Of a stretch of 64,000 nucleotides of DNA, positions 7,489-47,662 are shown piece by piece; the stretch's first letter is position 1; every line of letters starts with the position of its first letter. A program made the translations under genes and the position numbers. The stretch is from positions 186,001-250,000 of the IMG/VR virus record IMGVR_UViG_3300043399_000272; one strand, written 5' to 3'. The notes beneath the pieces are model-generated. The model did no database searches. It worked only from the letters and a program-made list of their open reading frames with translations, and had not been told where the DNA came from.

Positions 7489-8078
7489 TGGCAACTAAAA
7501 AAGCAACTCCGTCAGAAGAAAAATTCGAGAAACAAGACTTTGATTTGTTCAAGGCTTTAGAAGCGATTGACAAGAAAGACTATTCATATTACGATAGACT
7601 GACAGAAGAACAGCAAAAGAAGTTCGTACCGTTTATGATGACTCACTGGATGAGCCAAATCAAAAGCAATGGTAGTATGCAGGGATATTACGTGCGTAGT
7701 GTTGATTATCACGCTAATCAACATTTATTCAATGAAAACGTGATGAAACATCCCAAACTACAGTGGCTAATGTTGTGTGCTAGTAGCCCTGATATGGGAA
7801 AGCAATTCCATCAATGGGTGCCGCACTTGTCTAGCAAAGTTGCTACATTGAAAGAAACACCCAAAGAACGTGAAATTAGAGAGTATTTTAGTAAAATTTA
7901 TCCTAAGGCAAGCGAAGCAAACCTATATGCTATAAGCGAAGCATATGTTACAGAACACAAGAAAAAATCATACCTAGCCAAAAGATTTGAAAATCTAAAA
8001 TACGAAGATATTGAAATATTAGCAAATTTAGTGACCGACGATGACATTCGTAGATATGAAGAAGACCGAGGAAATTGA
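7488..8078 (+). CDS. clamp loader small subunit (gp62-like)
   Basis: DLFKALEAI...FVPFMMTHWMS...ANQ...LQWLML pattern resembles gp62; a gp44 homolog lies at 54390. Confidence 0.5.
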   Translation: MATKKATPSEEKFEKQDFDLFKALEAIDKKDYSYYDRLTEEQQKKFVPFMMTHWMSQIKSNGSMQGYYVRSVDYHANQHLFNENVMKHPKLQWLMLCASSPDMGKQFHQWVPHLSSKVATLKETPKEREIREYFSKIYPKASEANLYAISEAYVTEHKKKSYLAKRFENLKYEDIEILANLVTDDDIRRYEEDRGN

Positions 8079-8754
8079 AACGAAACACAGTTGCGAATTC
8101 TGCAACCGAACATTCGTCAGAGAAAAAACTCTGTTCACCCACATGTGTGAGACAAAGAATAGATGGTTGTCAAAAGATAAAATTGCAAATAGAATAGGAT
8201 TTCAAAGTTTCGTTCAATTTTATAAAAAACATTCTGCTGCTAAAAAGACAAAAACATATGATGAATTCATTCGTAGTCCATACTACACAGCTTTTGTAAA
8301 GTTTGGAAATTATTGTAGTGATATCAATGCTATCAACATTTCTCGTTTTGTTGATTGGTTATTAGCAGAACAAGTGTCAATTGATAATTGGAATAGTGAT
8401 AAAGTATATACTAGGTATTTGATCGAATATCTTAGAAAAGAAGATCCAATGGATGCTATACATCGTAGTGTAGAAACGTCAATAGAATTAGTAAAATCTG
8501 AAGGTATTCTTCCTAAAGACTTGTTGAGATTCGGTAATACAAACAAGATTTGTTATGCAATAACTACTGGTAAGATTAGCCCTTGGATGTTGTATCAAAG
8601 TAAAAGTGGCCCTAAGTTTTTAGACACGTTACACCCTGACCAAGTTAAATTCATTATAGATTATATTGATCCAGAGCAATGGGCACTAAAATTTCACAGA
8701 GAGCCGGAAAATGTCAGAGCAGTCAAAGAAATCCTTGATGTTGGGGGGTATTGA
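8056..8754 (+). CDS. hypothetical protein with N-terminal Zn finger
   Basis: CEFC-x12-HMC. Confidence 0.65.
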   Translation: MKKTEEIETKHSCEFCNRTFVREKTLFTHMCETKNRWLSKDKIANRIGFQSFVQFYKKHSAAKKTKTYDEFIRSPYYTAFVKFGNYCSDINAINISRFVDWLLAEQVSIDNWNSDKVYTRYLIEYLRKEDPMDAIHRSVETSIELVKSEGILPKDLLRFGNTNKICYAITTGKISPWMLYQSKSGPKFLDTLHPDQVKFIIDYIDPEQWALKFHREPENVRAVKEILDVGGY

Positions 8755-8965
8755 TATTAATCATGATTATAGAGTAAGAATACCCTTTACAGTAGGGTTC
8801 ATGAGTGACGGCGAAATAAATATGTGGAATGAAACATGTGCTAGAGCAATCGAGATGTTCGGATTGCCGGGTGACAAATACACATGTAGATTTACTAAAG
8901 AAGCGATTGAGTTTTGGTTCTTAGAAGAAAAAGATGCTATGATTTTTGAGTTGACTTGTGGATAA
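8711..8965 (+). CDS. array member (LRW-motif family)
   Basis: EMFGLPGDKY...FWFLEEKDAMIFELTCG. Confidence 0.7.
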   Translation: MSEQSKKSLMLGGIDINHDYRVRIPFTVGFMSDGEINMWNETCARAIEMFGLPGDKYTCRFTKEAIEFWFLEEKDAMIFELTCG

Positions 8966-9218
8966 GTGTTTAGAGTTTATATTGCCTAGCGGAGCAGCAG
9001 GTATGGCAGCCGGCATGACTCGTCAAGCTATAGGTAAAAAAATCAGAAAATTACAAGAAGATAAAAAAATAGGTCAGTATAAAACTAAAACGACAGGATA
9101 TAGATTTAAGGTATGGTTTGAGAATGAAATTGACTACACTACTTTTTTCCTTGTTTGGGAAGCCATTAACTCTTGGCATAAACCTAAAATCATTGAAGAA
9201 GATTACGATCCGAATTAA
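8958..9218 (+). CDS. array member (LRW-motif family, extended C-terminus)
   Basis: VWFENEIDYTTFFLVW. Confidence 0.65.
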   Translation: MDKCLEFILPSGAAGMAAGMTRQAIGKKIRKLQEDKKIGQYKTKTTGYRFKVWFENEIDYTTFFLVWEAINSWHKPKIIEEDYDPN

Positions 9219-9621
9219 AGCTCTTATAAGAATATTAAAAGCAAATCGCAAACTCAAAAAGAGTGGTTACAATAATTGGGCACATTATAAACATAACCGT
9301 GACCCCGATGTCGAAAGGTATGCTAATTGCATAGATGACTTCTACAAGGGTTATCCATATATCTATGCTTGCCCAAACCCAAACCACTATGCATATCAAC
9401 ACATAGCCGATTATGGACCAGGTGGTGACATATATGGGTTTAATGAGATAGAATTTTGGTGTCACGAAAAAATAAGGTGGAACTTTCGTTGTGACATGCA
9501 TAGAGTTTATGAGAATCAATGGGGAAAAATTGAGTTCAATGATATCGGAGGTTATGATAGAATATACTTTGCTTTTAAACGTGAACAAGATTTTACACAC
9601 TTTTTATTGCGATGGGCCTAA
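9118..9621 (+). CDS. array member (LRW-motif family); true start may be TTG at 9193
   Basis: IEFWCHE...YFAFKREQDFTHFLLRWA. Confidence 0.7.
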   Translation: MRMKLTTLLFSLFGKPLTLGINLKSLKKITIRIKALIRILKANRKLKKSGYNNWAHYKHNRDPDVERYANCIDDFYKGYPYIYACPNPNHYAYQHIADYGPGGDIYGFNEIEFWCHEKIRWNFRCDMHRVYENQWGKIEFNDIGGYDRIYFAFKREQDFTHFLLRWA

Positions 9622-9854
9622 AAAGAATATACATAATGTATCATACACCTAGATCGATGGAAGTTCTTTCATGGTTTTATGATACATTCGGTGAACCTCA
9701 GGAATGGGGAGGTATAATGTCAGAGCCTGTTCAATTGAAAAGTGGATATCAGTGGGCCAATGGTCAACATTCTACTAATTATCATGATGAAGCTAGTCCA
9801 TGTATTTGGTGTACAGAACAAGCGTTTATGATGTATTCTCTAAGGTGGTTATAA
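9612..9854 (+). CDS. array member (LRW-motif family)
   Basis: WFYDTFGEP...EQAFMMYSLRWL. Confidence 0.7.
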   Translation: MGLKRIYIMYHTPRSMEVLSWFYDTFGEPQEWGGIMSEPVQLKSGYQWANGQHSTNYHDEASPCIWCTEQAFMMYSLRWL

Positions 9855-10108
9855 TGGAACAAGGTAGCTTTACATATAAAACAACTAATTACTATGGTAG
9901 TCAACGAAAGATTCACATCGTATCTTGGAAAGGTAAGGGTGAAGTTGACGGGGATGAAATCCGAAAGTGGTGTATTGAAAACTTCGGAAATCCAGGTTAT
10001 CAGGAAGAACATTCTCAAGCTCGATGGCTAGATGATATTAAAGATTCGGGTGAAATCTATCTGTGTAAAGATGAAGATTTGACCTTTTTCTTACTCAAGT
10101 GGACATGA
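9854..10108 (+). CDS. array member (LRW-motif family)
   Basis: KWCIENFGNPG...IYLCKDEDLTFFLLKWT; TAATG overlap with previous stop. Confidence 0.75.
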   Translation: MEQGSFTYKTTNYYGSQRKIHIVSWKGKGEVDGDEIRKWCIENFGNPGYQEEHSQARWLDDIKDSGEIYLCKDEDLTFFLLKWT

Positions 10109-10314
10109 TGTACGATGATTTGACCCATAGGGTATTTCTAAAATGTCCAACTACAGACACAGATACAGTTGACAGGTGGTGTTACGAACATTTTGGTGAA
10201 CAGGGTGACAAATGGGATGCTTGGTTCGCAGATGATAGTCTCTGGAATTATGACCAAATTTATGCTTTCGTTAACCACGAAGATGCAGTACTTTTTACTC
10301 TAACTTGGGTATGA
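10105..10314 (+). CDS. array member (LRW-motif family)
   Basis: RWCYEHFGEQGDKW...YAFVNHEDAVLFTLTWV. Confidence 0.75.
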   Translation: MMYDDLTHRVFLKCPTTDTDTVDRWCYEHFGEQGDKWDAWFADDSLWNYDQIYAFVNHEDAVLFTLTWV

Positions 10315-10544
10315 GAAGATTACATTTTGATGGCTCTACTTGGCATGATACCAAACCCGGTTGGCATGAAATTGAATTGAATTTGAACGGTCAACCAAAA
10401 CGCTATCGTGAAATACTAGAATGGCTGTATAATACTATAGACAAGCCGGAAAGGCATTGTAGGTGGTTCCAAACGTCTGTTGGAATCAAAATTAAATTTA
10501 GGTACGAACGAGATTTTATTATCGCAACATTGAGGTGGACATGA
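10311..10544 (+). CDS. array member (LRW-motif family)
   Basis: EWLYNTI...IKFRYERDFIIATLRWT. Confidence 0.75.
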   Translation: MRRLHFDGSTWHDTKPGWHEIELNLNGQPKRYREILEWLYNTIDKPERHCRWFQTSVGIKIKFRYERDFIIATLRWT

Positions 10545-10894
10545 GAGTAGGTGTTTGGTATCGTACAGAATTACAACAACCCCCTAAGTCAGGTTACTAC
10601 CTTAGCTACAGAGGATGGGGTATCGCTGGCAAGGCAGATGACGACAGCGATTGGGGTTATGTCTATTACGATAAGAAAATAAATGAGTGGCGTGATTATC
10701 AAAATGTTAGCAGTAGCTATGCTATTGTCTATTACTGGACTGACGCTACGCCTGATGATTGGGTAAATCAAGACCCACCCGGTGTCACATTACATAAAGT
10801 AAAAGAAGAACACAATGTAGCACTGGAAGATGCGTGGAAGAAAGTTCAGGAGGCAATCGACCAGTACAACATGATTAAAGAGTTGGTGCGATGA
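10541..10894 (+). CDS. unrelated small protein inside the array (DUF551-like W..PP.SGYYL pattern)
   Basis: Coupled ATGA start; lacks the LRW motif. Confidence 0.6.
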   Translation: MRVGVWYRTELQQPPKSGYYLSYRGWGIAGKADDDSDWGYVYYDKKINEWRDYQNVSSSYAIVYYWTDATPDDWVNQDPPGVTLHKVKEEHNVALEDAWKKVQEAIDQYNMIKELVR

Positions 10895-11265
10895 CAATAC
10901 AATTACACGACTATCAATTGTGCGTTTTAGAACACTTAAAGGGATGGAAGCCGGGCGAAATGATGCTTATCTCTACTCCTAGACAAACTGGTAAAACTTA
11001 TCTCAATCAATTATTCGGTAAAATGAGTAACAGACAAATTTTTATGATGGGACCAGAACCTAAGTATAAATTCAGTCGTGCCAACTGGTATCAAGCAGAA
11101 TTTGACTGGCGAAAGTATGATGAAGTTGAAGAATGGTGCGAACAACAGTTTGGGCCGCACCCACAGAGACCAGATGCGTGGAGTCGCTGGTGGCATAAGT
11201 TTGAGAATAGCATTCTGTTCCGTGACGAAAAAGACTATGTATTGTTCATGTTGAGGTGGTCGTGA
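10891..11265 (+). CDS. array member with terminase-like P-loop fragment at N-terminus
   Basis: LHDYQ...PRQTGKT then EWCEQQFG...ILFRDEKDYVLFMLRWS. Confidence 0.75.
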   Translation: MTIQLHDYQLCVLEHLKGWKPGEMMLISTPRQTGKTYLNQLFGKMSNRQIFMMGPEPKYKFSRANWYQAEFDWRKYDEVEEWCEQQFGPHPQRPDAWSRWWHKFENSILFRDEKDYVLFMLRWS

Positions 11266-11507
11266 TGTTTATTCACACATACCAACAACAGGAGGATTGG
11301 AGAGATCCCGTACCCTGGTTTGTTGCTGCATTTACGACACCTAAGGAAAATCGTAAAGAGATTACCAAATGGTGTTACAAAACTTTTGGTGCCCCTAGTA
11401 TGAATCATCTTACTAAACAGATTCGTTGGAAAGATAGTATTCAATACGGTGAAATATATTTCAGTAATCAAAAAGACCTGGAGTGGTTTGTACTGAGGTG
11501 GTCATGA
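11265..11507 (+). CDS. array member (LRW-motif family)
   Basis: KWCYKTFG...IYFSNQKDLEWFVLRWS. Confidence 0.75.
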   Translation: MFIHTYQQQEDWRDPVPWFVAAFTTPKENRKEITKWCYKTFGAPSMNHLTKQIRWKDSIQYGEIYFSNQKDLEWFVLRWS

Positions 11508-11710
11508 CTATGCACAAAGTTGTTTATGCTCAAACTACAGATGGCACACTGTCTGCGTATCAGCGTAGCTATAAAGACCACCTAGTAGACGAATGGCTTA
11601 AAGAATATTGTAAAGGCCCTTACTATCATAACCCGGGCTGGACTACAGAAAAGTTTATTGAGTTTGAACGCAATGAAGATGCGTTTTGGTTTGCGTTAAG
11701 GTGGTGTTGA
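11504..11710 (+). CDS. array member (LRW-motif family)
   Basis: EWLKEYC...IEFERNEDAFWFALRWC. Confidence 0.75.
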   Translation: MTMHKVVYAQTTDGTLSAYQRSYKDHLVDEWLKEYCKGPYYHNPGWTTEKFIEFERNEDAFWFALRWC

Positions 11711-11952
11711 TGAATAACATTTCAGTTCATAATCTTATCGACAATCATATTATCAACTATCTTAGAGAGATTGATAAGCCCAGTAGAACATATTGGCCCT
11801 ATCTAATTCAGCTAAAATCTTGGGCTGACGTAAGCCCTGCTGAAAGATTCTGCTATACCCACTTCAAGAGTCGAAACTGGAGAAATATCAGCGCCGATTT
11901 TTATTTCAAACATAAAGAAGATTATGAATGGTTTATGTTAAGGTGGTCTTGA
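11710..11952 (+). CDS. array member (LRW-motif family)
   Basis: RFCYTHF...FYFKHKEDYEWFMLRWS. Confidence 0.75.
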   Translation: MNNISVHNLIDNHIINYLREIDKPSRTYWPYLIQLKSWADVSPAERFCYTHFKSRNWRNISADFYFKHKEDYEWFMLRWS

Positions 11953-12131
11953 TGGAAACAAATATTGTATATAGAGCTATGGCAGCAGGCAACTGGGATG
12001 AAAAAGTCGAATGGTGCAGAGAAAACTTGTATCCTGGAGGACACTATGAACCAAAATGGTATATGCGTTATCCTTGGATAGAATTTGATGATGAAAAAGA
12101 ATATATCTGGTTCAAGTTGAGGTGGGAATGA
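11952..12131 (+). CDS. array member (LRW-motif family)
   Basis: EWCRENL...IEFDDEKEYIWFKLRWE. Confidence 0.75.
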   Translation: METNIVYRAMAAGNWDEKVEWCRENLYPGGHYEPKWYMRYPWIEFDDEKEYIWFKLRWE

Positions 12132-12328
12132 GCCTAATTGACGATATCGATGATTTGATGTGGCCAGTATTTGTCAAGTTTGATAAAGCATTGGTTCCTG
12201 ACGAATGGTACGAACTAGATTGCTGGTGTAATCAGCAGTTTGGTAAAGATGGTTGGTGGCTTGAGAAAGGTGTCATGCGTCTTAGAAAAGAAGAACATGC
12301 TACAATATTCTTACTAAGATGGGGTTAA
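12128..12328 (+). CDS. array member (LRW-motif family)
   Basis: CWCNQQFGKDGWW...RLRKEEHATIFLLRWG. Confidence 0.75.
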   Translation: MSLIDDIDDLMWPVFVKFDKALVPDEWYELDCWCNQQFGKDGWWLEKGVMRLRKEEHATIFLLRWG

Positions 12329-12528
12329 TAGTTACAAAGTACATTTATGAAAATTTTGATACCGACGCCGCGGTAGAGTGGGCCATAGAAAATTGTCCTA
12401 GTTTTGAAAAGTACATGATAATAGAACTAGACTGGGAAGAAAAAGAAGATTTGGGTTGTTGGTTTAAATTTGAGGTATATTTTGGTGACGAAAAAGATGC
12501 AATGTTTTATTCATTGAGGTGGGCGTAA
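12319..12528 (+). CDS. array member (LRW-motif family)
   Basis: EWAIENC...VYFGDEKDAMFYSLRWA. Confidence 0.7.
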   Translation: MGLIVTKYIYENFDTDAAVEWAIENCPSFEKYMIIELDWEEKEDLGCWFKFEVYFGDEKDAMFYSLRWA

Positions 12529-12747
12529 TTGATTGAAGTGACATTAGAAGATAAATTACCTAGTGAGTTTTTAGAAATTGTTAGAGAAATTAAAGACAAA
12601 GGGTATGTTCAGGGAACTGACTTTGACTTTGCTTACCATCCACCCAAATTTGATAACTTTTCAGGGGATGCAGTGTATAATAGATGCGTCATATTCAAAT
12701 TTTATAAAGAAGAAATTGCAACATGGTTCAACCTAAAGTATCTTTGA
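12529..12747 (+). CDS. array member (LRW-motif family, LKY variant)
   Basis: FKFYKEEIATWFNLKYL; TTG start right after previous stop. Confidence 0.7.
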   Translation: MIEVTLEDKLPSEFLEIVREIKDKGYVQGTDFDFAYHPPKFDNFSGDAVYNRCVIFKFYKEEIATWFNLKYL

Positions 12748-12995
12748 TGGATGAAATAATCAAAGAAAAATTAGAAGAAATGGAAAAAAGTATAGACAAC
12801 GATGTGATGAGGTCTTGTCTAGTCGAAGGTGGATGGACAGAAATTAAATTTCATTATCACAGTGGTAAACACGCAGTTGATGTGTTAGAATGGTGCGGTG
12901 AAACGTTTAAAGAAAATCAATGGTCGAGACTGAATGGTTACTTTGTATTTCGCAAGAAAAAAGATGCTGAATGGTTTATGTTAAGGTGGCTATGA
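12747..12995 (+). CDS. array member with acidic N-terminal helix
   Basis: EEMEKSIDNDVMRSCL...EWCGETF...FVFRKKKDAEWFMLRWL. Confidence 0.75.
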   Translation: MDEIIKEKLEEMEKSIDNDVMRSCLVEGGWTEIKFHYHSGKHAVDVLEWCGETFKENQWSRLNGYFVFRKKKDAEWFMLRWL

Positions 12996-13333
12996 AAATC
13001 ATATGGGGAAGAAGCATAGGATGGAATATTTCCTATAATAATTACAGAAGCATACTGAAATACGCCGGCGATAATAATTTCGATATCACCCATAAAAATA
13101 TTAAAATGGAATATACTATAATAGAAAACGGTGCAGACTGCTATCCCTGGATGGAATACTTTGCGATATTACCTAGAAAAACAGTGACAGGTAAACGCAT
13201 ATGGTGGCAGAAAGCATATAAGCGTAAAGTATGGGTAGTGTGGGGCATAGGCTTTCACATGGAACCACATGTACAATATGCAACAGCCTTTGATTTGTTA
13301 ATGTATGACAACAACTATAACACTAAAAGGTAA
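12992..13333 (+). CDS. small protein, paralog of 32538-32762
   Basis: FAILPRKTVTGKRIWWQKAYKR...YATAFDLL. Confidence 0.65.
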   Translation: MKIIWGRSIGWNISYNNYRSILKYAGDNNFDITHKNIKMEYTIIENGADCYPWMEYFAILPRKTVTGKRIWWQKAYKRKVWVVWGIGFHMEPHVQYATAFDLLMYDNNYNTKR

Positions 13334-13526
13334 TTTAACTGGTGAACAAGAACAATGGCTCGCAAAGAATATCGGGCCTAGGATGCATTACATTCACAAT
13401 AGTATAGGTGGTCAAGGTTGGATAGCAAGACACGAATGGAAACCTGGAATGGTTTCTAAGTATTGGAATCTTTCTATTGAAGATGACCGTCTCGCTACAT
13501 TTTTTGTACTGATGTTCCCGCAATGA
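13305..13526 (+). CDS. array member (divergent)
   Basis: QWLAKNIG...GW...SIEDDRLATFFVLMF. Confidence 0.65.
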   Translation: MTTTITLKGNLTGEQEQWLAKNIGPRMHYIHNSIGGQGWIARHEWKPGMVSKYWNLSIEDDRLATFFVLMFPQ

Positions 13527-13867
13527 TAGAAAATCATCCTTTTAAAATTACAGAGTACGACAGGTTTGTAACTGTGACTTGGCCTGCTTTTCATGACATA
13601 CGAGACAAAATGACTAAAGTAAAATTAGTTGAGGCAGCATTTCAGCAATCTAAAGCAGTTGAGGTCGGGTTTGTATTAGAACTCAATAACAAAGAATATG
13701 ATATCATGTGGATCAATTCTTTTCTTAGTTTAACTCAAAATGATTATGTGCATTATGTACAAGACATGTATGTGATTAGAGGTGTTGCTTATAGAGATAA
13801 GCAAGACGCAGAAAAGTTATATAATTGGTTAGAAGGAAAGTATATATGGCAGCTATTAAAGGACTAG
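13523..13867 (+). CDS. hypothetical protein (possible divergent array member)
   Basis: VAYRDKQDAEKL. Confidence 0.6.
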   Translation: MIENHPFKITEYDRFVTVTWPAFHDIRDKMTKVKLVEAAFQQSKAVEVGFVLELNNKEYDIMWINSFLSLTQNDYVHYVQDMYVIRGVAYRDKQDAEKLYNWLEGKYIWQLLKD

Positions 13868-14100
13868 GAAGTTTTCAACCAATGATTGAGTATGTTGATG
13901 TGGTTCGTAATAACACGGATTACACCTCAAAGAAAACGTATATCCCTAAGCCCAATGATTCAGATGAACACATTAGATGGTGCCGCAGAAATTTAGGAGC
14001 TAGGGGTGATGGTTGGGACTTTGCAGGTTCTGGTAAAACGTTGACTATTTTTATTTGGTCACACAAATTGCAATTTATGTATGAAATGTGGCAACAATAG
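13825..14100 (+). CDS. array member (divergent)
   Basis: RWCRRNLGARGDGWDF...FMYEMW. Confidence 0.65.
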   Translation: MVRRKVYMAAIKGLGSFQPMIEYVDVVRNNTDYTSKKTYIPKPNDSDEHIRWCRRNLGARGDGWDFAGSGKTLTIFIWSHKLQFMYEMWQQ

Positions 14101-14924
14101 TGAAGAATAAAATAGGTATTGATATCGGCAAAACCAAAACTGAATGCTGTGTCATTTCACTTAACAACGAAGTGTTGTTTCGTGAAAGATTACCTACAGG
14201 TACCGTCTTTAATGAAATAAAAGAATTGTATCAAAAGGCTATCAAATACACAGATACAACGAATCACACCATCGGTGTGTGTATGCCGGGAAAATTAAGC
14301 AACGTTAGTGGGTTAATGATTAATTCTAGTATTGAATTTTTGAATAATACTGACTTTGTAAAAAATCTACAACTTGTTTTAAACCATGATTTTAAAACAG
14401 CAAATGATTCACAATGTTTTGCATTAGCAGAAGCATTACTAGGGGCAGGGAAAAATTATAATATTGTTTATGGCTTAATATTGGGCACTGGCGTGGGCGG
14501 GGGCATCGTAATAAACGGTAGAAGTACACAAAGCGAGTTTGGTCACACTAGTCTAGATAGTTCAAACAAAATACTATGTAGATGTAAGAGAATTGGTTGC
14601 GTTGAAACATGGCTCAGTGGCTCAGGTGTCGATGTATGGGCAAAAGAATTGTTAGGGATCGATATGTCTACTGTAGACTATATGAAAGATCCCAAAGTAA
14701 AGCAGATATACTTTGAAAAGTTTGGATTAGCTCTATCTAATTTAATTCAAACAGTTAATCCAGAATGTATTGTAATCGGTGGTGGAATCAGTAATAATAG
14801 TGAAGTATATTCCGTAGGTGTAGAGCGCATCAAACAAAAGTTGTTTGATGATGAATTGTCTATACCTGTAGTCAAAGCAGAACTAGGAGATAGTGCAGGC
14901 GTTATAGGTGCTGCACTTTTATAA
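14088..14924 (+). CDS. ROK-family sugar kinase
   Basis: GIDIGKT, NDSQCFALAE, LGTGVGGG, EFGH, CxC..GCxE Zn site, IGGG, AGVIGAA. Confidence 0.88.
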   Translation: MATIVKNKIGIDIGKTKTECCVISLNNEVLFRERLPTGTVFNEIKELYQKAIKYTDTTNHTIGVCMPGKLSNVSGLMINSSIEFLNNTDFVKNLQLVLNHDFKTANDSQCFALAEALLGAGKNYNIVYGLILGTGVGGGIVINGRSTQSEFGHTSLDSSNKILCRCKRIGCVETWLSGSGVDVWAKELLGIDMSTVDYMKDPKVKQIYFEKFGLALSNLIQTVNPECIVIGGGISNNSEVYSVGVERIKQKLFDDELSIPVVKAELGDSAGVIGAALL

Positions 14925-14926
14925 TT

Positions 14927-15496
14927 ATGGCAAATGATATAATGATTGACCTTGAAACACTTGACACGACACCGTATTGTGTAATTCTCACAATCGGTGC
15001 AGTCAGGTTCGATCCTAGAGGTCAAGGAGTGGTTGAACGATTAGAACTACGTCCTACGATTGAGGATCAAACAGAAATTCATAATAGAATAATTGATGAT
15101 GACACATTACGGTGGTGGTCTACACAGAGCCCTGATGCACTTGAAGAAGCATTGGGAGACAGGGGACGTACATCATTTAGAGAGTGCATGGAGGCCCTTT
15201 ATAAGTTTTGTTGGAACCGTCGTGCTGTTTGGGCTAATGGTTCTGCATTTGATATCGTAGCATGTGAAACAGGTATGCGTCAGACATTGACTGATTATCC
15301 TAATCCTATTCCGTGGCCATTCTGGACAGTTAGAGATACACGAACACTGTATGAAGTAGCAGGTGTTAGTTTGAAGGATAAGAAATACGGTAGCAAAACA
15401 ACGCACAAAGCAGTCGAAGATGCAGAACACCAAGCGATTGTTGTGCAAGACGCATACATGAAATTGATGAAAGCAGGATTGGCAACACCGCGATGA
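14927..15496 (+). CDS. DEDDh 3'-5' exonuclease (Rv2179c/exodeoxyribonuclease VIII-like)
   Basis: MIDLETL, WANGSAFD, RDTRT, HKAVEDA. Confidence 0.85.
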   Translation: MANDIMIDLETLDTTPYCVILTIGAVRFDPRGQGVVERLELRPTIEDQTEIHNRIIDDDTLRWWSTQSPDALEEALGDRGRTSFRECMEALYKFCWNRRAVWANGSAFDIVACETGMRQTLTDYPNPIPWPFWTVRDTRTLYEVAGVSLKDKKYGSKTTHKAVEDAEHQAIVVQDAYMKLMKAGLATPR

Positions 15497-15954
15497 AAAC
15501 ATACGGTGAATTATTACCTGGCTTAAAGATCATTGAACATACAAAGTACAATGATAATAGAGGTAATTTTTGTGAAACATGGAAGATAACAAATGATGGG
15601 ATGCGAGGATCGTTCCGTCAATTGAACACTGCAACATCTAAACAAAATGTCATTCGTGGTATGCACAGACAAGACCAATCTAAGTTGATTATGCCTGTTT
15701 ATGGTAGAATATTTGACGTTGCACTAGAACCTGAAACTGGTAAGTGGTTTGCGATTGAATTAGACAACACCTCAGGTTTATTAGTACCACCAGAATACGC
15801 ACACGGTTACATGACATTAACTGAAAACACGATAGTGCAGTATATTGTAGACATGCCCTATAATAAAGACGTTGAAGAAAATTTCAAATGGGATCAATAT
15901 AACATCGCTTGGCCAATCGTTGTTACACCCATACTATCAGAGAAAGACAAATGA
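15493..15954 (+). CDS. rmlC: dTDP-4-dehydrorhamnose 3,5-epimerase
   Basis: DNRGNFCE, RGMH, AHGY, ILSEKD cupin motifs. Confidence 0.85.
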   Translation: MKTYGELLPGLKIIEHTKYNDNRGNFCETWKITNDGMRGSFRQLNTATSKQNVIRGMHRQDQSKLIMPVYGRIFDVALEPETGKWFAIELDNTSGLLVPPEYAHGYMTLTENTIVQYIVDMPYNKDVEENFKWDQYNIAWPIVVTPILSEKDK

Positions 15955-24224: not shown

Positions 24225-25463
24225 ATGGCTATCGTACAAATATCTAAAGTTCAAGCAAGAACAGGCGCAAACGTTGATTTACCACAATTAGATGTGGGGG
24301 AATTAGGTTACGCAACGGATGAAGGTAAATTATATATCGGAAATGATCCAGCAGAACCACTGCCGACCATTGATGGTAAATATATTTCTGAAATTCTAAC
24401 GACTACATCATCACTTGACTTTTCAAGATTAAACGGTTCTGATAACGTGTCAATGGACATGACTAGCGTAAGTTCAGGTGAGTTATTAGGAATTAGTGTA
24501 TCTGGGAATATTGCTACAGTAGTTAATGTAGGTGGTGATGCCGGCGGCGAGATTAACTTAGGGGATGCTAGTAACGTCAAAATTTCAGGTAACGGTGTCG
24601 TTGGTGGCTATGTCCTAGCAAGTGACGGAAATGGTGGACTAACTTGGGTAACTAACGGTGTTTTAAAATCAGTTATTCAGTCTATCGGAAACGCAAGTGG
24701 TACGGCGTTGTTTACTACGCAAGGTGATCACTTATTCGGTACTGGTACAATTTGTTCAGTAACAAATATTCAGCCATCAGGTGTCCAGGGTATTATTCAA
24801 GTATCAGGGGTTGACGATAGTAATAAATTTTATGTTAACCGCAGATCAAGTAATACATTCTCCTTGCACAAAGCTGCCAATGCAATGGCGGGTAATTTAC
24901 CATACGATATTCAATTCGCTAACTATACTGCAAATAGTGGTTCAATAGTTGGCATGATAACACCTAGTGGAAACATAAGTATTGCCGGTACTAGCAATAC
25001 TCAACTATTTTTTAATGACACTGGAGCTACAATAGGTGGTAGTAGTAATCTAACATTTAACAAAACCACATCAGTTTTAACGCTAATTGGTAACATAACA
25101 ACCACTAATGCTAATTTAGGTAATGCTGCAACTGCGAATTATTTCATTGGTTCGTTTAGGGGTGCAGTTGGTAATGCAGCGACCGCTAACGCCGGAACTT
25201 TTACTACAGTAATAGCTAACAATAGTACAGTTTCAGGAAATATTGATGTAGGTGGAAATTTAGATGTAACTGGAAACATTACATTTGATTCTAGTTCAGG
25301 TGCTAATGTTACTGCAACCGGATTTATGCAGCTTCCTGTATATGCCGACGATACAGCACGTGATGCAGCTATCTTATCCCCTTCAGAGGGTATGATGATT
25401 TTCAATCAGTCCGGCGCCAAGTTTCAAGGATATGACGGTACTGATTGGGTAAATCTCAATTAA
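24225..25463 (+). CDS. tail fibre/adhesin-like protein (Mtd N-terminal-like motif)
   Basis: IVQISKVQARTG...LPQL..GELGYATD..KLYIG; G/N/T-rich; C-terminal GMMIFN...FQGY.G..W. Confidence 0.65.
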   Translation: MAIVQISKVQARTGANVDLPQLDVGELGYATDEGKLYIGNDPAEPLPTIDGKYISEILTTTSSLDFSRLNGSDNVSMDMTSVSSGELLGISVSGNIATVVNVGGDAGGEINLGDASNVKISGNGVVGGYVLASDGNGGLTWVTNGVLKSVIQSIGNASGTALFTTQGDHLFGTGTICSVTNIQPSGVQGIIQVSGVDDSNKFYVNRRSSNTFSLHKAANAMAGNLPYDIQFANYTANSGSIVGMITPSGNISIAGTSNTQLFFNDTGATIGGSSNLTFNKTTSVLTLIGNITTTNANLGNAATANYFIGSFRGAVGNAATANAGTFTTVIANNSTVSGNIDVGGNLDVTGNITFDSSSGANVTATGFMQLPVYADDTARDAAILSPSEGMMIFNQSGAKFQGYDGTDWVNLN

Positions 25464-44551: not shown

Positions 44552-47500
44552 ATGGCTCAACAATACATAGACTTTGGTACATTTCCAAACGATCCATCGG
44601 CTGATCCGATTCGATCAGCATTTCAGAAAATAAACGAAAACTTCAATGAACTTTACGGTACTTTTTTCTCGTCCGGTGTTACATCTATTACCACTACTGG
44701 TGGTATTACAGCTCCGGCAGGAGGAACAGGGGACGTATTAATTGAGGGTAATTTCCCTAGAATTCAGATTATTACAGGTAGTAATTTAACAGTTGGAGCA
44801 GGTGCACCTAACACTACCCAGTCAGCAAATATCACTACCTTTTCTGTTCCGTTTTATTTAGATTTAGCTAATTCGATTAATACACAATCAGCTACTTTTA
44901 CAACAGGTGTAACTACATCTAATCTTAGCGTAGGCAACGTAGTAACTAGCTCATTAATTCCCAATGCATCTACCGGTCAATTAGGAAATAGTACCAATAG
45001 ATGGGGTAATTTATTTGTTACTTCTAATATAAATTTAGGAGCAGCAGCCAATAGTCAAACGATTAGATCAAACACTTCAGGTGTAATTCTAACTAATCTT
45101 TTTGTAACATCAAACACTGTAATAGGTAATGCTAACATCACCGGATTAGTTACTGCAGGCAATGCTACTGTGACAGGTCTAACGACTACAAATAATTTAA
45201 CAGTAACTGGAAATTTGATCGGTAACTTAATTCCTGATCAAGACGAAGTTTATAATTTAGGTAGCCCCACACGTAAGTTTAAAGAATTATTTCTTGCTGC
45301 GAATACTTTGACATTGGGTGCAGTTACAATATCAGCAGACTCAAATAGCATTATTGTTCCTAATTTATCAGTCACTGACACAATCAGTGTAGGTACGATA
45401 ACTGCAGGATTTGTCGACGGTATAATAACTGCAACATCACAACCATTAATTACTAGTTTGGGCGCATTAAGCAACTTGACTGTTGCTGGTTGTGTAGCGA
45501 TTGGTAATACATTAATTGATTCTAACGGGGCAATCACAGTAGGTAGTACAGTTATTGATCCTTCCGGTAACATTATACTACCGGCTAATGGTACAATTAC
45601 TGGAACAGTTATTACTCCACCGGGCGGAACAGTTAGTGCTCCGGGTTCTAATACACAAATCTTATTCAATGATGACGGTAACTTAGCAGCAGTTCCAGGA
45701 CTACAATTCAACAAAGTAACTAGTTTATTAAGTATTTCAGGTAATGTAGCAGGAGGAAACTTAGTATCTTCAGGTGCTCTATCAGTTACTGGTAACGGTA
45801 GTGTAGGCGGCACATTTAGTGCTACTGGAAATGTGAACGCTGGCAATTTAATTACCTTAGGTGTTTTAAGTGCTAGCGGCAATATTTCAGGCGGTAATAT
45901 TTCAACTAATGGATTCTTACAAGTAGTAGGCAATGCTAGTTTGGGCAATATTACAACAACTAGAATAGATGGTACTATAGTTAGTGTATCGGGTAATATT
46001 TCAGGCGCTAACTTAATTGCTAGCGGTATAATGCGAGTAGACGGTAACGCAAACGTAGGTAACCTAACTACTAGTGGTTTAGTGTCAGCCGCAACAATAA
46101 ATGCATCAGGAAATGTGTCTGCTGGTAATATTAGTGTTTCCGGATCACTAGCAGTTGACACATTATCAGGAAATAACTTAAGTTCTAGTGGCAACTTAAC
46201 TGTTACCGGTAATTCTTCTTTAGCAAATGCAATAGCTACAAGTCTATCTGCTATAGGTAATATTTCAAGTAGTAATTTAAATATTACCGGTAATTCTTCT
46301 TTAGCAAATGCAATAGCTACAAGTCTATCTGCTATAGGTAATATTTCAAGTAGTAACTTAATCATCACTGGTAATTCTACACTAGCTAATGCATTGGCTG
46401 CGAGTCTTGCAGCTACGGGTAATGTTTCAGGTGGAAACATATTGACTGGTGGACTAATTAATGCTACTGGTAATATATTAGGTGGTAACTTATCCACCAC
46501 TGGTGTAGTTTCTGCTACAGGTAATGTTTCAGGTGGCAATATAACAACTACAGGGTTAATCACTGCGAATGGCACCATCGTCGGCGGCAATCTATCCACT
46601 GCTGGTGTAGTTTCTGCTACAGGTAATGTTTCAGGTGGAAACTTAACTACAAACGGATTAATTGTAGCTACAGGCAATGTCTCAGGTGGTAACTTATCTA
46701 CTACAGGTGTAGTCTCTGCTACAGGTAATATATTAGGTGGTAACTTATCTACTACAGGTGTAGTCTCTGCTACAGGTAATATATTAGGTGGTAACATTAA
46801 TGCTAACGGTAGCGTTACAGGTAACTTGTTTAGTGCTAATTTCTTCAGCGGTGATGGAAACAGCATAACAAACTTGAATGCGTTAAATGCTAAGAATAAG
46901 ATTGTGCCAACTGGTTTATTAATTGGTTCAGGAACAGCAACTATAACTTTCTCTACGCAATCTTTTGCCCCGTTTGATATTGGACAAACAGTAAATGTTT
47001 CAAACATTTTACCAAGTGGATTAAACGGTTCACAGACCATTACGTTCTGCAACGCAGACACATTAACATTTAGTACTGCACTAACCTCAAACGTTGGATT
47101 TGTGCCAGGTACATCAATAGTATCAGGTGACATTAAAGTTTCAAGTGCTATAAGTGCTGCTTCGGCAAATACTGCTAATTCTGCGAATACTGCTAACTCA
47201 GCAACGATTGCTGGACAAGTTACAGGTGCAACACAAGGAAACATCACAAGTGTAGGAACTTTAGTAGGATTGACTGTTGCTCCAACTGGATCAATAACCG
47301 GTGCTAATACTATTTCAGGTAATTTTATTTCAGGTAATTTTGTTCTTGCAAGTGTTACTAGTGGCATCGTTGCTTCTGGTACTACTCAAAGCACCGCATA
47401 TCCGTTGATTAGTCAATATAATGTTGTTTCTACTTCTAGTACAGGAACTGCTGATGGTGTACGTTTACCAACAGCTACAGTGGGTATGCAAGTTATTATC

Positions 47501-47662
47501 ATCAATAATACTGCAAACAGTGTTAAAGTTTATCCAGCATCAAGTGCAAAAATAGATTCCCTAGCAACAAATGCATCATTCTCATTGGGTACAGGTGCAA
47601 GACTATTATTAGTAGCAACAGGGATTTCTCAGTGGTACACAATGGTTGGTGTTTACGGTTAA
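44552..47662 (+). CDS. long tail fibre with gp9/gp10-like N-terminus
   Basis: DPIRSAFQKINENFNELY resembles the T4 gp9/gp10 N-terminus; GN(V/I)SGGN repeats; late promoter at 44522. Confidence 0.75.
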   Translation: MAQQYIDFGTFPNDPSADPIRSAFQKINENFNELYGTFFSSGVTSITTTGGITAPAGGTGDVLIEGNFPRIQIITGSNLTVGAGAPNTTQSANITTFSVPFYLDLANSINTQSATFTTGVTTSNLSVGNVVTSSLIPNASTGQLGNSTNRWGNLFVTSNINLGAAANSQTIRSNTSGVILTNLFVTSNTVIGNANITGLVTAGNATVTGLTTTNNLTVTGNLIGNLIPDQDEVYNLGSPTRKFKELFLAANTLTLGAVTISADSNSIIVPNLSVTDTISVGTITAGFVDGIITATSQPLITSLGALSNLTVAGCVAIGNTLIDSNGAITVGSTVIDPSGNIILPANGTITGTVITPPGGTVSAPGSNTQILFNDDGNLAAVPGLQFNKVTSLLSISGNVAGGNLVSSGALSVTGNGSVGGTFSATGNVNAGNLITLGVLSASGNISGGNISTNGFLQVVGNASLGNITTTRIDGTIVSVSGNISGANLIASGIMRVDGNANVGNLTTSGLVSAATINASGNVSAGNISVSGSLAVDTLSGNNLSSSGNLTVTGNSSLANAIATSLSAIGNISSSNLNITGNSSLANAIATSLSAIGNISSSNLIITGNSTLANALAASLAATGNVSGGNILTGGLINATGNILGGNLSTTGVVSATGNVSGGNITTTGLITANGTIVGGNLSTAGVVSATGNVSGGNLTTNGLIVATGNVSGGNLSTTGVVSATGNILGGNLSTTGVVSATGNILGGNINANGSVTGNLFSANFFSGDGNSITNLNALNAKNKIVPTGLLIGSGTATITFSTQSFAPFDIGQTVNVSNILPSGLNGSQTITFCNADTLTFSTALTSNVGFVPGTSIVSGDIKVSSAISAASANTANSANTANSATIAGQVTGATQGNITSVGTLVGLTVAPTGSITGANTISGNFISGNFVLASVTSGIVASGTTQSTAYPLISQYNVVSTSSTGTADGVRLPTATVGMQVIIINNTANSVKVYPASSAKIDSLATNASFSLGTGARLLLVATGISQWYTMVGVYG
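46203..46356 (+). repeat. 81-nt-period tandem duplication (73 nt identical) in fibre gene
   Basis: ttaccggtaattcttc...tcaagtagtaa at 46203 and 46284. Confidence 0.9.
46684..46795 (+). repeat. 51-nt (17 aa) tandem repeat in fibre gene
   Basis: aggtggtaacttatctactacaggtgtagtctctgctacaggtaatatatt x2; degenerate copies extend upstream. Confidence 0.9.

What the first reader, a model, noticed from the sequence alone, without database searches (positions are those of the whole stretch)
8711..14100. Tandem array of about 21 short coupled ORFs, about 18 sharing a conserved C-terminal LRW scaffold with variable N-termini
Seen in sequence: back-to-back ORFs of about 60-165 aa with ATGA/TGATG/TAATG overlaps. 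Most share a central (E/K)WC.E.FG..G..W motif and a terminal (F/Y)xF..E.D...F.L(R/K)W-x-stop (LLRWA, SLRWL, LLKWT, TLTWV, TLRWT, MLRWS, VLRWS, ALRWC, MLRWS, KLRWE, LLRWG, SLRWA, NLKYL, MLRWL). Identity outside the motifs is low, so this is an old, diversified expansion rather than a recent duplication. Inference: a cassette-like library of small alpha/beta domains, possibly an anti-defence or host-takeover repertoire, or subunits of a shared hetero-oligomer. I do not recognise a named family.
Basis: partly seen in the sequence, partly recalled or inferred. Interest (0 to 1): 0.85.

Follow-up and report, generated by a model that had tools for sequence, protein, structure and literature searches.

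The report
Tandem small-protein family in giant phage
A 5.4-kb stretch of an uncultured giant phage carries about 18 old, diverged copies of one unnamed 60-70-residue protein domain, read as a single coupled operon. The conserved Leu-Arg-Trp ending of each gene also serves as the ribosome-binding site or start codon of the next gene.

Summary
Window 8711-14100 holds 21 back-to-back + strand genes. Fifteen are significant members of one family, three more (g16, g19, g02) are divergent members, and three (g08, g18, g20) are unrelated.

The domain folds as beta-beta-alpha-beta-beta-alpha (AF2 pLDDT 86). It has no Pfam, PHROG, NCBIfam, PADLOC or PDB match. It does have 2,267 clusters (50% identity) in metagenomes, all unnamed.

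The array sits at a fixed hotspot (UvsW-type helicase module | array | exonuclease-primase-DnaB) in a clade of uncultured T4-like jumbo phages. Copy number ranges from 0 to about 30. Order is colinear, and orthologues are under purifying selection.

Two new points:
- **Dual coding.** The terminal L-R-W codons are TTG AGG TGG, which gives the Shine-Dalgarno GAGGTGG for the overlapping next start. Alternatively they are NGA TGG, which contains that start. AGG is used in 62% of cases there and 8% elsewhere (p = 1e-51).
- **Borrowed motifs.** Longer members, including window g09, carry disordered N-terminal tails. These resemble the most conserved motifs of essential phage proteins: the DnaB-type P-loop, the RNR cysteine loop, and in relatives the capsid gp23 95-128 segment.

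Function is not shown. My best guess is an early accessory binding or decoy repertoire.

The parts
8041..8754 (+). Anchor gene (237 aa, phrog_11058, unknown function, Cys/His zinc-finger-like N-terminus). It is the conserved upstream border of the array.
   Evidence: Found in 406 IMG/VR contigs, with family members directly downstream on the same strand.
8738..8965 (+). g01, family member (75 aa; alternative start 8711). Always the first gene of the array in relatives.
   Evidence: Profile E 3e-3, later 1e-12. First after the anchor in all long loci that have a detectable g01 orthologue.
8958..9218 (+). g02, probable degenerate member. The FFLVW ending is followed by a 19-aa read-on that overlaps g03. 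Start uncertain.
   Evidence: hhalign 86% over the C-terminal 22 columns only. Among the long loci compared it has an orthologue only in the window's own contigs; jackhmmer found 5 homologous ORFs in all loci.
9124..9621 (+). g03, member with a 100-aa basic N-terminal extension (165 aa). Ends LLRWA with R = CGA.
   Evidence: Orthologues of 138-167 aa (P0209, P0238).
9612..9854 (+). g04, member (80 aa). Its ATG lies inside the CGA-TGG (Arg-Trp) codons of g03. Alternative start 9636.
9854..10108 (+). g05, member (84 aa), TAATG junction.
10108..10314 (+). g06, member (68 aa), TGATG junction.
10311..10544 (+). g07, member (77 aa), ATGA junction.
10541..10894 (+). g08, not a member (117 aa). Its C-terminus weakly matches phrog_23093. 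It has orthologues at the same array position.
10891..11265 (+). g09, member with a 55-aa N-terminal tail. The tail carries a Walker-A segment (TPRQTGKT) like that of DnaB-type helicases, and the folded domain follows it.
11251..11267 (+). Example junction: TTG AGG TGG TCG TGA TG. This encodes Leu-Arg-Trp-Ser-stop of g09, contains the Shine-Dalgarno GAGGTGG, and holds the ATG of g10.
11265..11507 (+). g10, member (80 aa). This is the protein that was modelled.
11504..11710 (+). g11, member (68 aa).
11710..11952 (+). g12, member (80 aa).
11952..12131 (+). g13, member (59 aa).
12128..12328 (+). g14, member (66 aa). Ends LLRWG with R = AGA.
12319..12528 (+). g15, member (69 aa). Its ATG lies inside the AGA-TGG codons of g14.
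12529..12747 (+). g16, divergent member (72 aa, ends NLKYL, TTG start).
   Evidence: hhalign 95%. Orthologues in most relatives.
12747..12995 (+). g17, member (82 aa).
12992..13333 (+). g18, not a member (113 aa). Conserved array resident.
13305..13526 (+). g19, divergent member (73 aa, ends FFVLMFPQ).
   Evidence: hhalign 97.6%, E 3e-12.
13523..13867 (+). g20, not a member (114 aa). Conserved array resident.
13846..14100 (+). g21, member (84 aa, degenerate ending YEMWQQ). Last gene of the array.
14927..15496 (+). 3'-5' exonuclease (Rv2179c-like). It is the conserved downstream border of the array in relatives.
   Evidence: The ROK kinase at 14088-14924 lies between them only in this phage.

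Best explanation
**Shown.** The region is one translationally coupled operon of about 18 ancient paralogues of a single 60-70-residue alpha+beta domain (beta-beta-alpha-beta-beta-alpha). The domain has an aromatic core (W.C...FG ... RW ... F.F..E.D...F.LRW) and always sits at the extreme C-terminus.

The array occupies a fixed accessory hotspot between the UvsW-type helicase module and the exonuclease/primase/DnaB module. This holds across a large clade of uncultured T4-like jumbo phages.

Genes are gained and lost as cassettes, giving 0 to about 30 per genome. Each retained paralogue is under purifying selection.

The last codons have two jobs. As protein they end helix 2. As RNA they are either the Shine-Dalgarno sequence (GAGGUGG, 5-8 nt before an ATG that overlaps the stop) or, as NGA-UGG, the next start codon itself. 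A ribosome finishing one cistron is therefore handed to the next.

**Inferred.** The domain is a stable scaffold with variable surfaces, hairpins and N-terminal tails, and no conserved catalytic constellation. I therefore think the members act by binding. Most likely they form an early-expressed accessory repertoire, each member occupying a different host or competitor protein (host takeover or counter-defence).

A subset carries flexible tails that copy the most conserved peptides of essential phage proteins: the DnaB-type P-loop, the RNR cysteine loop, and the gp23 95-128 segment (the Gol region). This points to molecular mimicry, meaning decoys or pseudo-substrates.
For: **Family and fold**
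- Membership statistics.
- AF2 pLDDT 85.8.
- Conserved positions are mostly aromatic or hydrophobic.
- The domain ends within 0-3 residues of the C-terminus in 145 of 151 hits.

**Size and range**
- 2,267 clusters at 50% identity, all unnamed.
- No relative found by one pattern-based scan of the 185k species-representative genomes.
- tblastn with g09 and g10 found nothing in GenBank phages.

**Hotspot and turnover**.

**Purifying selection**: orthologue dN 0.07-0.3, no higher than the flanking genes; omega about 0.05-0.3.

**Coupling**
- Junction sequences.
- AGG at the LRW arginine in 124 of 199 cases, against 44 of 560 elsewhere in the domain (Fisher p = 1e-51).
- With AGG, the next ATG is at ATGA or TGATG in 89 of 118 cases.
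- With AGA or CGA, the internal ATG opens the next ORF in 52 of 66 cases.
- AGGTGG is concentrated in the array, while the rest of the window uses AGGA/GGAG.
- No + strand terminator and no promoter excess.

**Tails**
- Pfam Gp23 hit, E 9e-7.
- Profile of tails against T4 gp23 residues 95-128, E 8.6e-8.
- All 11 PDB hits of the NLCxEIxLP profile are RNR alpha chains, and the alignments shown place the match on the catalytic loop.
- The best non-family hits of the g09 tail profile are the phages' own DnaB Walker A region, E 2e-4.
- The only named PHROG hits are DnaB-like helicase, terminase large subunit, DNA polymerase and RNR large subunit.
- The tail is predicted disordered, pLDDT 45-55.
- Motif codons vary synonymously between phages.
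Against: - No experiment, no structural or sequence link to any known anti-defence protein, and no known partner.
- Charge is heterogeneous (pI 4.1-9.6), so there is no common DNA-mimic property.
- Orthologues are not fast-evolving, which is unlike a classic arms-race effector.
- The tail similarities other than gp23 are individually weak (E 1e-3 to 0.7). They could partly reflect ascertainment, because only fragments of very conserved motifs are recognisable.
- A Gol-like decoy could as easily trigger as block a Lit-like protease.
- Early expression is inferred only from the position in the replication module.
Confidence: 0.4

Rival explanations
1. Selfish cassette family. The genes multiply and shuffle because their conserved 3' ends and junctions (about 50 nt, up to 21 identical bases) promote unequal or illegitimate recombination. 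The proteins give the phage little benefit, and the mosaic N-termini are recombination scars.
For: - Direct repeats of 54-55 nt at 62-74% identity at the gene junctions.
- Large copy-number differences at one locus.
- N-terminal modules swapped within one subfamily.
- g02 looks decayed.
- Analogy with PeSL-mediated shuffling in T4-type phages (PMC2839356, PMC4122927).
Against: - Each paralogue has orthologues kept at 60-89% identity with low dN.
- Order is colinear across distant relatives.
- Tail motifs are conserved at the protein level while their codons vary.
- Junction similarity is no greater than the protein and Shine-Dalgarno constraints would give.
Confidence: 0.15
2. Nucleic-acid- or ribosome-binding regulators. 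The fold would be a permuted ferredoxin-like or SUI1-like alpha+beta sandwich, and the paralogues would tune translation or replication of different targets.
For: - The best PDB fold hits are eIF1/SUI1 and mitoribosomal L49-type proteins, TM 0.43-0.49.
- The Atlas structure neighbours include SUI1 and Img2.
- The array lies in the replication module.
- A related phage encodes IF3 and S21.
- The Gol region of gp23 binds EF-Tu (PMC3014915).
Against: - Foldseek E >= 0.2, which is not significant.
- No Pfam SUI1 match.
- Many members are strongly acidic.
- No conserved basic surface is evident from the alignment.
Confidence: 0.15
3. Subunits or accessory factors of a housekeeping assembly (replisome, nucleotide-synthesis complex or virion) that need many related small partners.
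For: - Fixed position between replication genes.
- A core set (g01, g03, g07, g16-g21) recurs in order in many relatives.
- Coupled translation favours fixed ratios of products.
Against: - Copy number ranges from 0 to about 30, and content differs even between phages whose anchor proteins are about 65% identical.
- The family is absent from the syntenic region of the related cultured jumbo phage Atu_ph07.
- tblastn with two members found nothing in GenBank phages.
Confidence: 0.12
4. Relic of a homing element. The domain would descend from an intron- or intein-associated protein (for example a LAGLIDADG-like half-domain). The N-terminal tails would be captured exon or extein flanks from classic homing sites.
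For: - The tails match DnaB, RNR, DNA polymerase and terminase, the P-loop match being to DnaB and weakly to terminase.
- These are among the most intein-rich proteins, and DnaB insertion site b is in the P-loop (PMC4760082).
- About 20 of the top 50 weak Foldseek hits are LAGLIDADG endonucleases.
- The Atu_ph07 terminase gene is split right after its Walker A.
Against: - LAGLIDADG matches have TM 0.27-0.37 and E >= 0.8.
- There is no LAGLIDADG or other nuclease motif.
- All three tail-bearing members whose context was checked lie inside the array, not in or beside the source gene.
- Several different motifs are strung together in a single tail.
Confidence: 0.08

Closest known systems
Hyperplastic regions of T4-type phages with PeSL-flanked small early ORFs (PMC2839356, PMC4122927)
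   Same: Blocks of small, variable genes of unknown function lie between conserved core genes. Content changes by cassette gain and loss, and conserved short sequences sit at the cassette borders.
   Different: Here the cassettes are paralogues of one domain. There are no intergenic promoter/stem-loop motifs (and junctions overlap). The conserved border is coding sequence that also acts as the ribosome-binding site or start codon.
Lineage-specific expansions of a small domain in jumbo phages, for example about 35 zinc-ribbon copies in Bacillus phage G (PMC7824862)
   Same: Dozens of paralogues of one small domain in a giant phage genome, with function unknown.
   Different: The fold is different (no zinc ribbon). 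The family spans a whole uncultured clade with orthologous, colinear arrays, rather than being an expansion in one genome.
Poxvirus 'genomic accordion' and K3L pseudo-substrate mimicry (from my own knowledge)
   Same: Copy number varies at one locus, and there is a possible mimic of a conserved protein segment used as a decoy.
   Different: The copies here are ancient (20-34% identical), not recent identical duplicates. The mimicry idea is untested here.
Tandem immunity-protein arrays of polymorphic toxin systems (SUKH/Imm families; from my own knowledge)
   Same: Tandem, diverged paralogues of small alpha+beta binding domains.
   Different: No toxin gene is adjacent, there is no Pfam SUKH or Imm match, and the genes are strictly phage-borne.
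Translational coupling through overlapping stop/start codons (ATGA, TGATG) in phage operons
   Same: The same junction types occur, with a Shine-Dalgarno sequence inside the upstream gene.
   Different: The signal is fixed into a conserved protein motif shared by a whole family. Two interchangeable encodings are used: AGG-TGG as the Shine-Dalgarno sequence, and NGA-TGG as the start codon.

Membership tests
Any named protein family (Pfam, PHROGs, NCBIfam, PADLOC, PDB sequences) | A match above the family threshold, or E < 1e-3. | tested here: not met
   The only hit is g01 to phrog_16777 (unknown function) at E 6e-3.
T4-type hyperplastic region with PeSL cassettes | Variable small ORFs lying between conserved core genes. 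| tested here: met
   Synteny helicase-p166-p196-anchor-[array]-exonuclease-primase-DnaB, with variable content.
T4-type hyperplastic region with PeSL cassettes | An early promoter plus stem-loop motif between the ORFs. | tested here: not met
   Genes overlap. There is no + strand terminator-like site and no promoter excess.
Genomic accordion (recent tandem amplification) | Near-identical tandem copies. | tested here: not met
   Paralogues are 20-34% identical, and orthologues are far closer than paralogues.
SUI1/eIF1 fold family | Significant structural or sequence similarity to SUI1. | tested here: inconclusive
   Foldseek E 0.2, TM 0.46-0.49. No Pfam PF01253 hit.
LAGLIDADG homing endonucleases | A LAGLIDADG helix with a catalytic acidic residue, and an alpha-beta-beta-alpha-beta-beta-alpha fold. 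| tested here: not met
   No N-terminal helix in the model. TM 0.27-0.37, E >= 0.8. No Pfam hit.
Polymorphic-toxin immunity arrays | An adjacent toxin gene and an Imm or SUKH domain. | tested here: not met
   The neighbours are replication and sugar-metabolism genes, and there is no Pfam match.
Translationally coupled operon | Stop/start overlap, with a Shine-Dalgarno sequence inside the upstream gene at 5-9 nt. | tested here: met
   This is sequence evidence only. Re-initiation itself cannot be tested here.
Gol-type capsid peptide (gp23 segment that binds EF-Tu and activates Lit) | Sequence similarity to the conserved gp23 segment. | tested here: met
   Met for relatives only, not for any window gene. 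Tail profile against T4 gp23 residues 95-128, E 8.6e-8. Pfam Gp23 hit E 9e-7.
Gol-type capsid peptide (gp23 segment that binds EF-Tu and activates Lit) | Binding to EF-Tu, or an effect on a Lit-like protease. | not testable with these tools
   Needs biochemistry or complex modelling.

The most novel reading that the evidence does not exclude
The family is a peptide-display decoy system. A small stable scaffold is amplified into arrays. Some members present flexible copies of the phage's own most conserved motifs: the Gol-like capsid segment, the DnaB P-loop and the RNR cysteine loop. These motifs may be sensed by host immunity or targeted by endonucleases. The copies would antagonise host abortive-infection sensors, proteases or competitor elements that recognise them. 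The invariant C-terminus would be kept because it also drives ribosome hand-over along the array.
Probability: 0.12. Interest if true: 0.9.

Novelty: new variant of a known kind. Interest (0 to 1): 0.62.

Why it matters
This is a very large family with no name in any curated library: 2,267 clusters at 50% identity. It takes up 5-8 kb of the genome in a widespread clade of uncultured giant phages.

It offers a clean natural example of a protein motif and a translation signal evolving as one unit, and this can be tested with simple reporter constructs.

The N-terminal tails look like pieces of capsid, helicase and ribonucleotide-reductase motifs. If that similarity reflects mimicry, it would be a new way for phages to deal with immune sensors that recognise conserved phage proteins.

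Even if the function turns out to be mundane, the profile built here lets thousands of 'hypothetical proteins' be grouped, and it marks a genomic hotspot in these phages.

Tried and rejected
- **Megablast** of 8000-15000 against GenBank phages gave no match.
- **tblastn** of g10 and g09 against GenBank phages gave none.
- **The search for related loci with the family alignment** failed because no conserved 7-10-column stretch exists.
- **Species-genome scan** with a g09-type domain alignment gave no relatives.
- **Foldseek against PDB** gave nothing below E 0.2. **BFVD** returned only uncharacterised uncultured-phage proteins.
- **ESM Atlas** returned only unnamed viral clusters.
- **PADLOC and NCBIfam** gave nothing.
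- **Terminase origin of the g09 tail.** BLASTP against both pieces of the Atu_ph07 TerL was not significant. The profile against PDB gave only generic P-loops at E about 1. The profile scored Atu TerL at E 0.66 but the phages' own DnaB at 2e-4. I therefore moved the P-loop segment from TerL to a DnaB-type helicase.
- **UvsW helicase as the source** was rejected (hhalign probability 0.5%).
- **Atu_ph07 syntenic region** has no members.
- **Fetching the clade's TerL** through Atu TerL found only close Atu relatives.
- **dN/dS** is only indicative because dS is saturated.
- **DNA-mimic idea** is not supported, because charge is heterogeneous.
- **GH42 beta-galactosidase** weak similarity (E 0.2) was treated as chance.

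Full report
**Context**

The window is part of an uncultured jumbo phage.
- It is identical to IMG/VR contigs of 260 kb and 100 kb.
- Its UvsW-type helicase is only 50-54% identical to those of Sinorhizobium phage Phosso, Agrobacterium phage Atu_ph07 and the 121Q/BF-like phages.
- The window also encodes a DnaB-type helicase, a primase, a tail sheath, a gp15-like protein and a ClpB-like ATPase.
- GC content is 35-41%.
- Megablast of the region finds nothing in GenBank phages.

**Observation**

Between 8711 and 14100 there are 21 consecutive + strand ORFs. The true starts are the ATGs that overlap or abut the previous stop, as ATGA, TGATG or TAATG. Most products are therefore 59-85 aa.

Membership was established in three steps.
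- Pairwise phmmer links 11 of them, E down to 6e-13.
- A profile of these finds g15, g01, g03 and g04 among all 613 six-frame ORFs of the window, and nothing outside the array. A broader profile of 163 sequences gives the same 15.
- Profile-profile comparison using orthologue alignments adds g19 (97.6%), g16 (95%) and, weakly, g02 (86%, last 22 columns only). g08, g18 and g20 are unrelated.

Conserved positions are W36, C37, F41, G42, R50, W51, F61, E64, D66, F70, L72, R73 and W74. Paralogues are 20-34% identical to g10.

**Fold and known families**

AlphaFold2 with the 15-sequence alignment gives a confident model of g10 (pLDDT 85.8). The topology is strand-strand-helix-strand-strand-helix.
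- Foldseek finds nothing significant in the PDB. The best hits are eIF1/SUI1 and mitoribosomal L49-type proteins at E 0.2-0.8 and TM 0.43-0.49. Many LAGLIDADG enzymes appear at TM about 0.3.
- In BFVD only uncharacterised 'uncultured Caudovirales phage' proteins match, at E from 1e-4.
- Pfam, PHROGs, NCBIfam, PADLOC and PDB sequence searches are negative.

**Size and range of the family**

- An exhaustive profile search of 1.84 billion cluster representatives gives 2,267 clusters at E <= 1e-3. Nearly all are 55-170 aa.
- The domain ends within 0-3 residues of the C-terminus in 145 of 151 cases.
- Every source name is 'hypothetical protein'.
- One pattern-based scan of 185,579 species-representative bacterial and archaeal genomes found no relative.
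- tblastn with g10 and g09 found nothing in GenBank phages.

**Genomic behaviour**

The gene just upstream (8041-8754, phrog_11058) occurs in 406 IMG/VR contigs. In the 80 loci fetched, family members lie directly downstream on the same strand, at 0 to 19 per locus.

In about 30 long loci the order is helicase, p166, p196, anchor, array, exonuclease, p213, p256, primase, DnaB.
- Where detectable, g01 is the first array gene.
- Shared paralogues are colinear.
- The window's g10-g15 block is missing from L059/L065 and only partly present in L030.
- The ROK kinase at 14088-14924 is unique to this phage.
- A related 200-kb scaffold has 30 array genes, almost all ending F.LRW.

Orthologues are 60-89% identical. 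Their dN (0.07-0.3) is no higher than that of the anchor, primase or p196, and omega is about 0.05-0.3. dS is saturated, so these values are only indicative.

The array is therefore an old accessory hotspot. It changes by gene gain and loss, not by rapid sequence change.

**Dual use of the C-terminus**

In the window the last codons of most members read TTG AGG TGG NNN TGA(TG). This contains GAGGTGG 5-8 nt before the next ATG.

Counts across 199 non-identical LRW-ending members from the fetched loci:

| Feature | At the LRW motif | Elsewhere in the domain |
|---|---|---|
| Arginine codon AGG | 62% | 8% (Fisher p = 1e-51) |
| Leucine codon TTG | 53% | 23% |

- With AGG, an ATG that opens an ORF of at least 40 codons sits at the ATGA or TGATG position in 89 of 118 cases.
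- With AGA or CGA, the ATG formed by NGA-TGG opens the next ORF in 52 of 66 cases. Window examples are g03 to g04 at 9612 and g14 to g15 at 12319.
- AGGTGG occurs 42 times in the window, 15 of them in the array. Other genes use AGGA/GGAG.
- There is no + strand terminator and no promoter excess.

Base-pairing of GAGGUGG with the 16S 3' end is established knowledge. Re-initiation itself is an inference.

The junctions are also the best-conserved DNA in the array: 54-55-nt repeats at 62-74% identity, with up to 21 identical bases.

**N-terminal tails**

Longer members have extensions in front of the domain.
- **Capsid type.** One group of tails is homologous to the major capsid protein. The Pfam Gp23 hit has E 9e-7, above threshold. 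A profile of ten such tails hits T4 gp23 residues 95-128 at E 8.6e-8. gp23's Gol region, described as its most conserved part, binds EF-Tu and activates the Lit protease (PMC3014915). That Gol spans about residues 93-122 is from my memory.
- **g09 type.** The window's g09 belongs to a subfamily of at least 401 clusters. Its tails mostly read Walker-A segment then NLCxEIxLP.
  - All 11 PDB hits of the NLCxEIxLP profile are ribonucleotide reductase alpha chains. The alignments shown place the match on the catalytic cysteine loop, for example E. coli R1 residues 436-448. The best E is 0.058, so each hit is weak on its own.
  - The best non-family matches of the tail profile are the phages' own DnaB-type helicases at the H1/Walker A region, E 2e-4 to 2e-3 in a set of 8,600 ORFs.
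  - A scan of 67 members against 38,880 PHROGs returns, among named families, only DnaB-like helicase (5 members), terminase large subunit (2), DNA polymerase (1) and RNR large subunit (1). Two unnamed PHROGs also gave single hits. All E values are about 1e-3.

Further properties of the tails:
- Codons of the motifs differ synonymously between phages, so conservation is at the peptide level.
- AF2 models the g09 tail as disordered (pLDDT 45-55) and the domain as folded (75-91).
- Three tail-bearing members whose context was checked lie inside the array, not next to the source genes.
- DnaB and RNR are the most intein-rich bacterial proteins, and DnaB insertion site b is in the P-loop (PMC4760082). 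This overlap may only reflect that both phenomena involve the most conserved motifs.

**Interpretation**

The anatomy, coupling, hotspot behaviour and purifying selection are shown. Function is inferred.

The conserved residues are mainly core aromatics. Surfaces, hairpins and tails vary, charge is heterogeneous, and content is accessory. I therefore favour a repertoire of small binding proteins expressed with the replication genes, with some members acting as mimics of conserved phage peptides.

The rivals are a selfish cassette family, nucleic-acid or ribosome-binding regulators, housekeeping subunits, and a relic of a homing element. They are weighed in their own sections. None is excluded.

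**Novelty**

The general kind is known: a variable block of small early genes in a T4-type or jumbo phage, or a lineage-specific expansion. Examples are in PMC2839356, PMC4122927 and PMC7824862.

What appears undescribed is the family itself, the fixed dual-coding C-terminus, and the tails built from motifs of essential proteins.

Noticed in passing
window 14088-14924 and 15493-15954: A ROK-family sugar kinase lies between the array and the exonuclease only in this phage. A dTDP-4-dehydrorhamnose 3,5-epimerase follows. In a relative (L091) the same border carries cupin, nucleotidyltransferase and PfkB kinase genes. The downstream edge of the array therefore looks like a second insertion hotspot, this one for sugar-metabolism genes.
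   Followed up: partly
window 8041-8754: The conserved anchor protein (phrog_11058, unknown function) starts with a Cys/His zinc-finger-like motif (CEFCNRTFVREKTLFTHMC). It overlaps the first array gene.
   Followed up: no
L084:1559-3750 (Agrobacterium phage Atu_ph07): The annotated terminase large-subunit gene is in two pieces. The first ORF ends shortly after its Walker A (CGRQLGKS), which suggests an intervening element at the P-loop.
   Followed up: no
L084:30161-39980 (Atu_ph07): Eleven consecutive ORFs of about 250-360 aa, all 'hypothetical protein', follow the primase/helicase. By their sizes they look like another tandem family in a related cultured jumbo phage. Their similarity to each other was not tested.
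   Followed up: no
L081 (356-kb contig, GCA_013565675.1): A related giant phage carries family members in a different context. It also encodes IF3, ribosomal protein S21, HSP20, ClpS and a ClpP-like protease.
   Followed up: no
window 24225-25463 and 44552-47662: These two proteins are similar to each other (E 3e-7). The first has an Mtd_N-like N-terminus, so they are probably tail-fibre or receptor-binding paralogues. They are the only other paralogue pair in the window.
   Followed up: partly
window 59191-61464: A full-length ClpA/ClpB-type double AAA+ chaperone is encoded by the phage.
   Followed up: no
window 8958-9218 / 9124-9621: g02 reads 19 codons past the usual family end and overlaps g03 by 94 nt. 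This looks like a member that lost its stop codon and may be decaying.
   Followed up: partly
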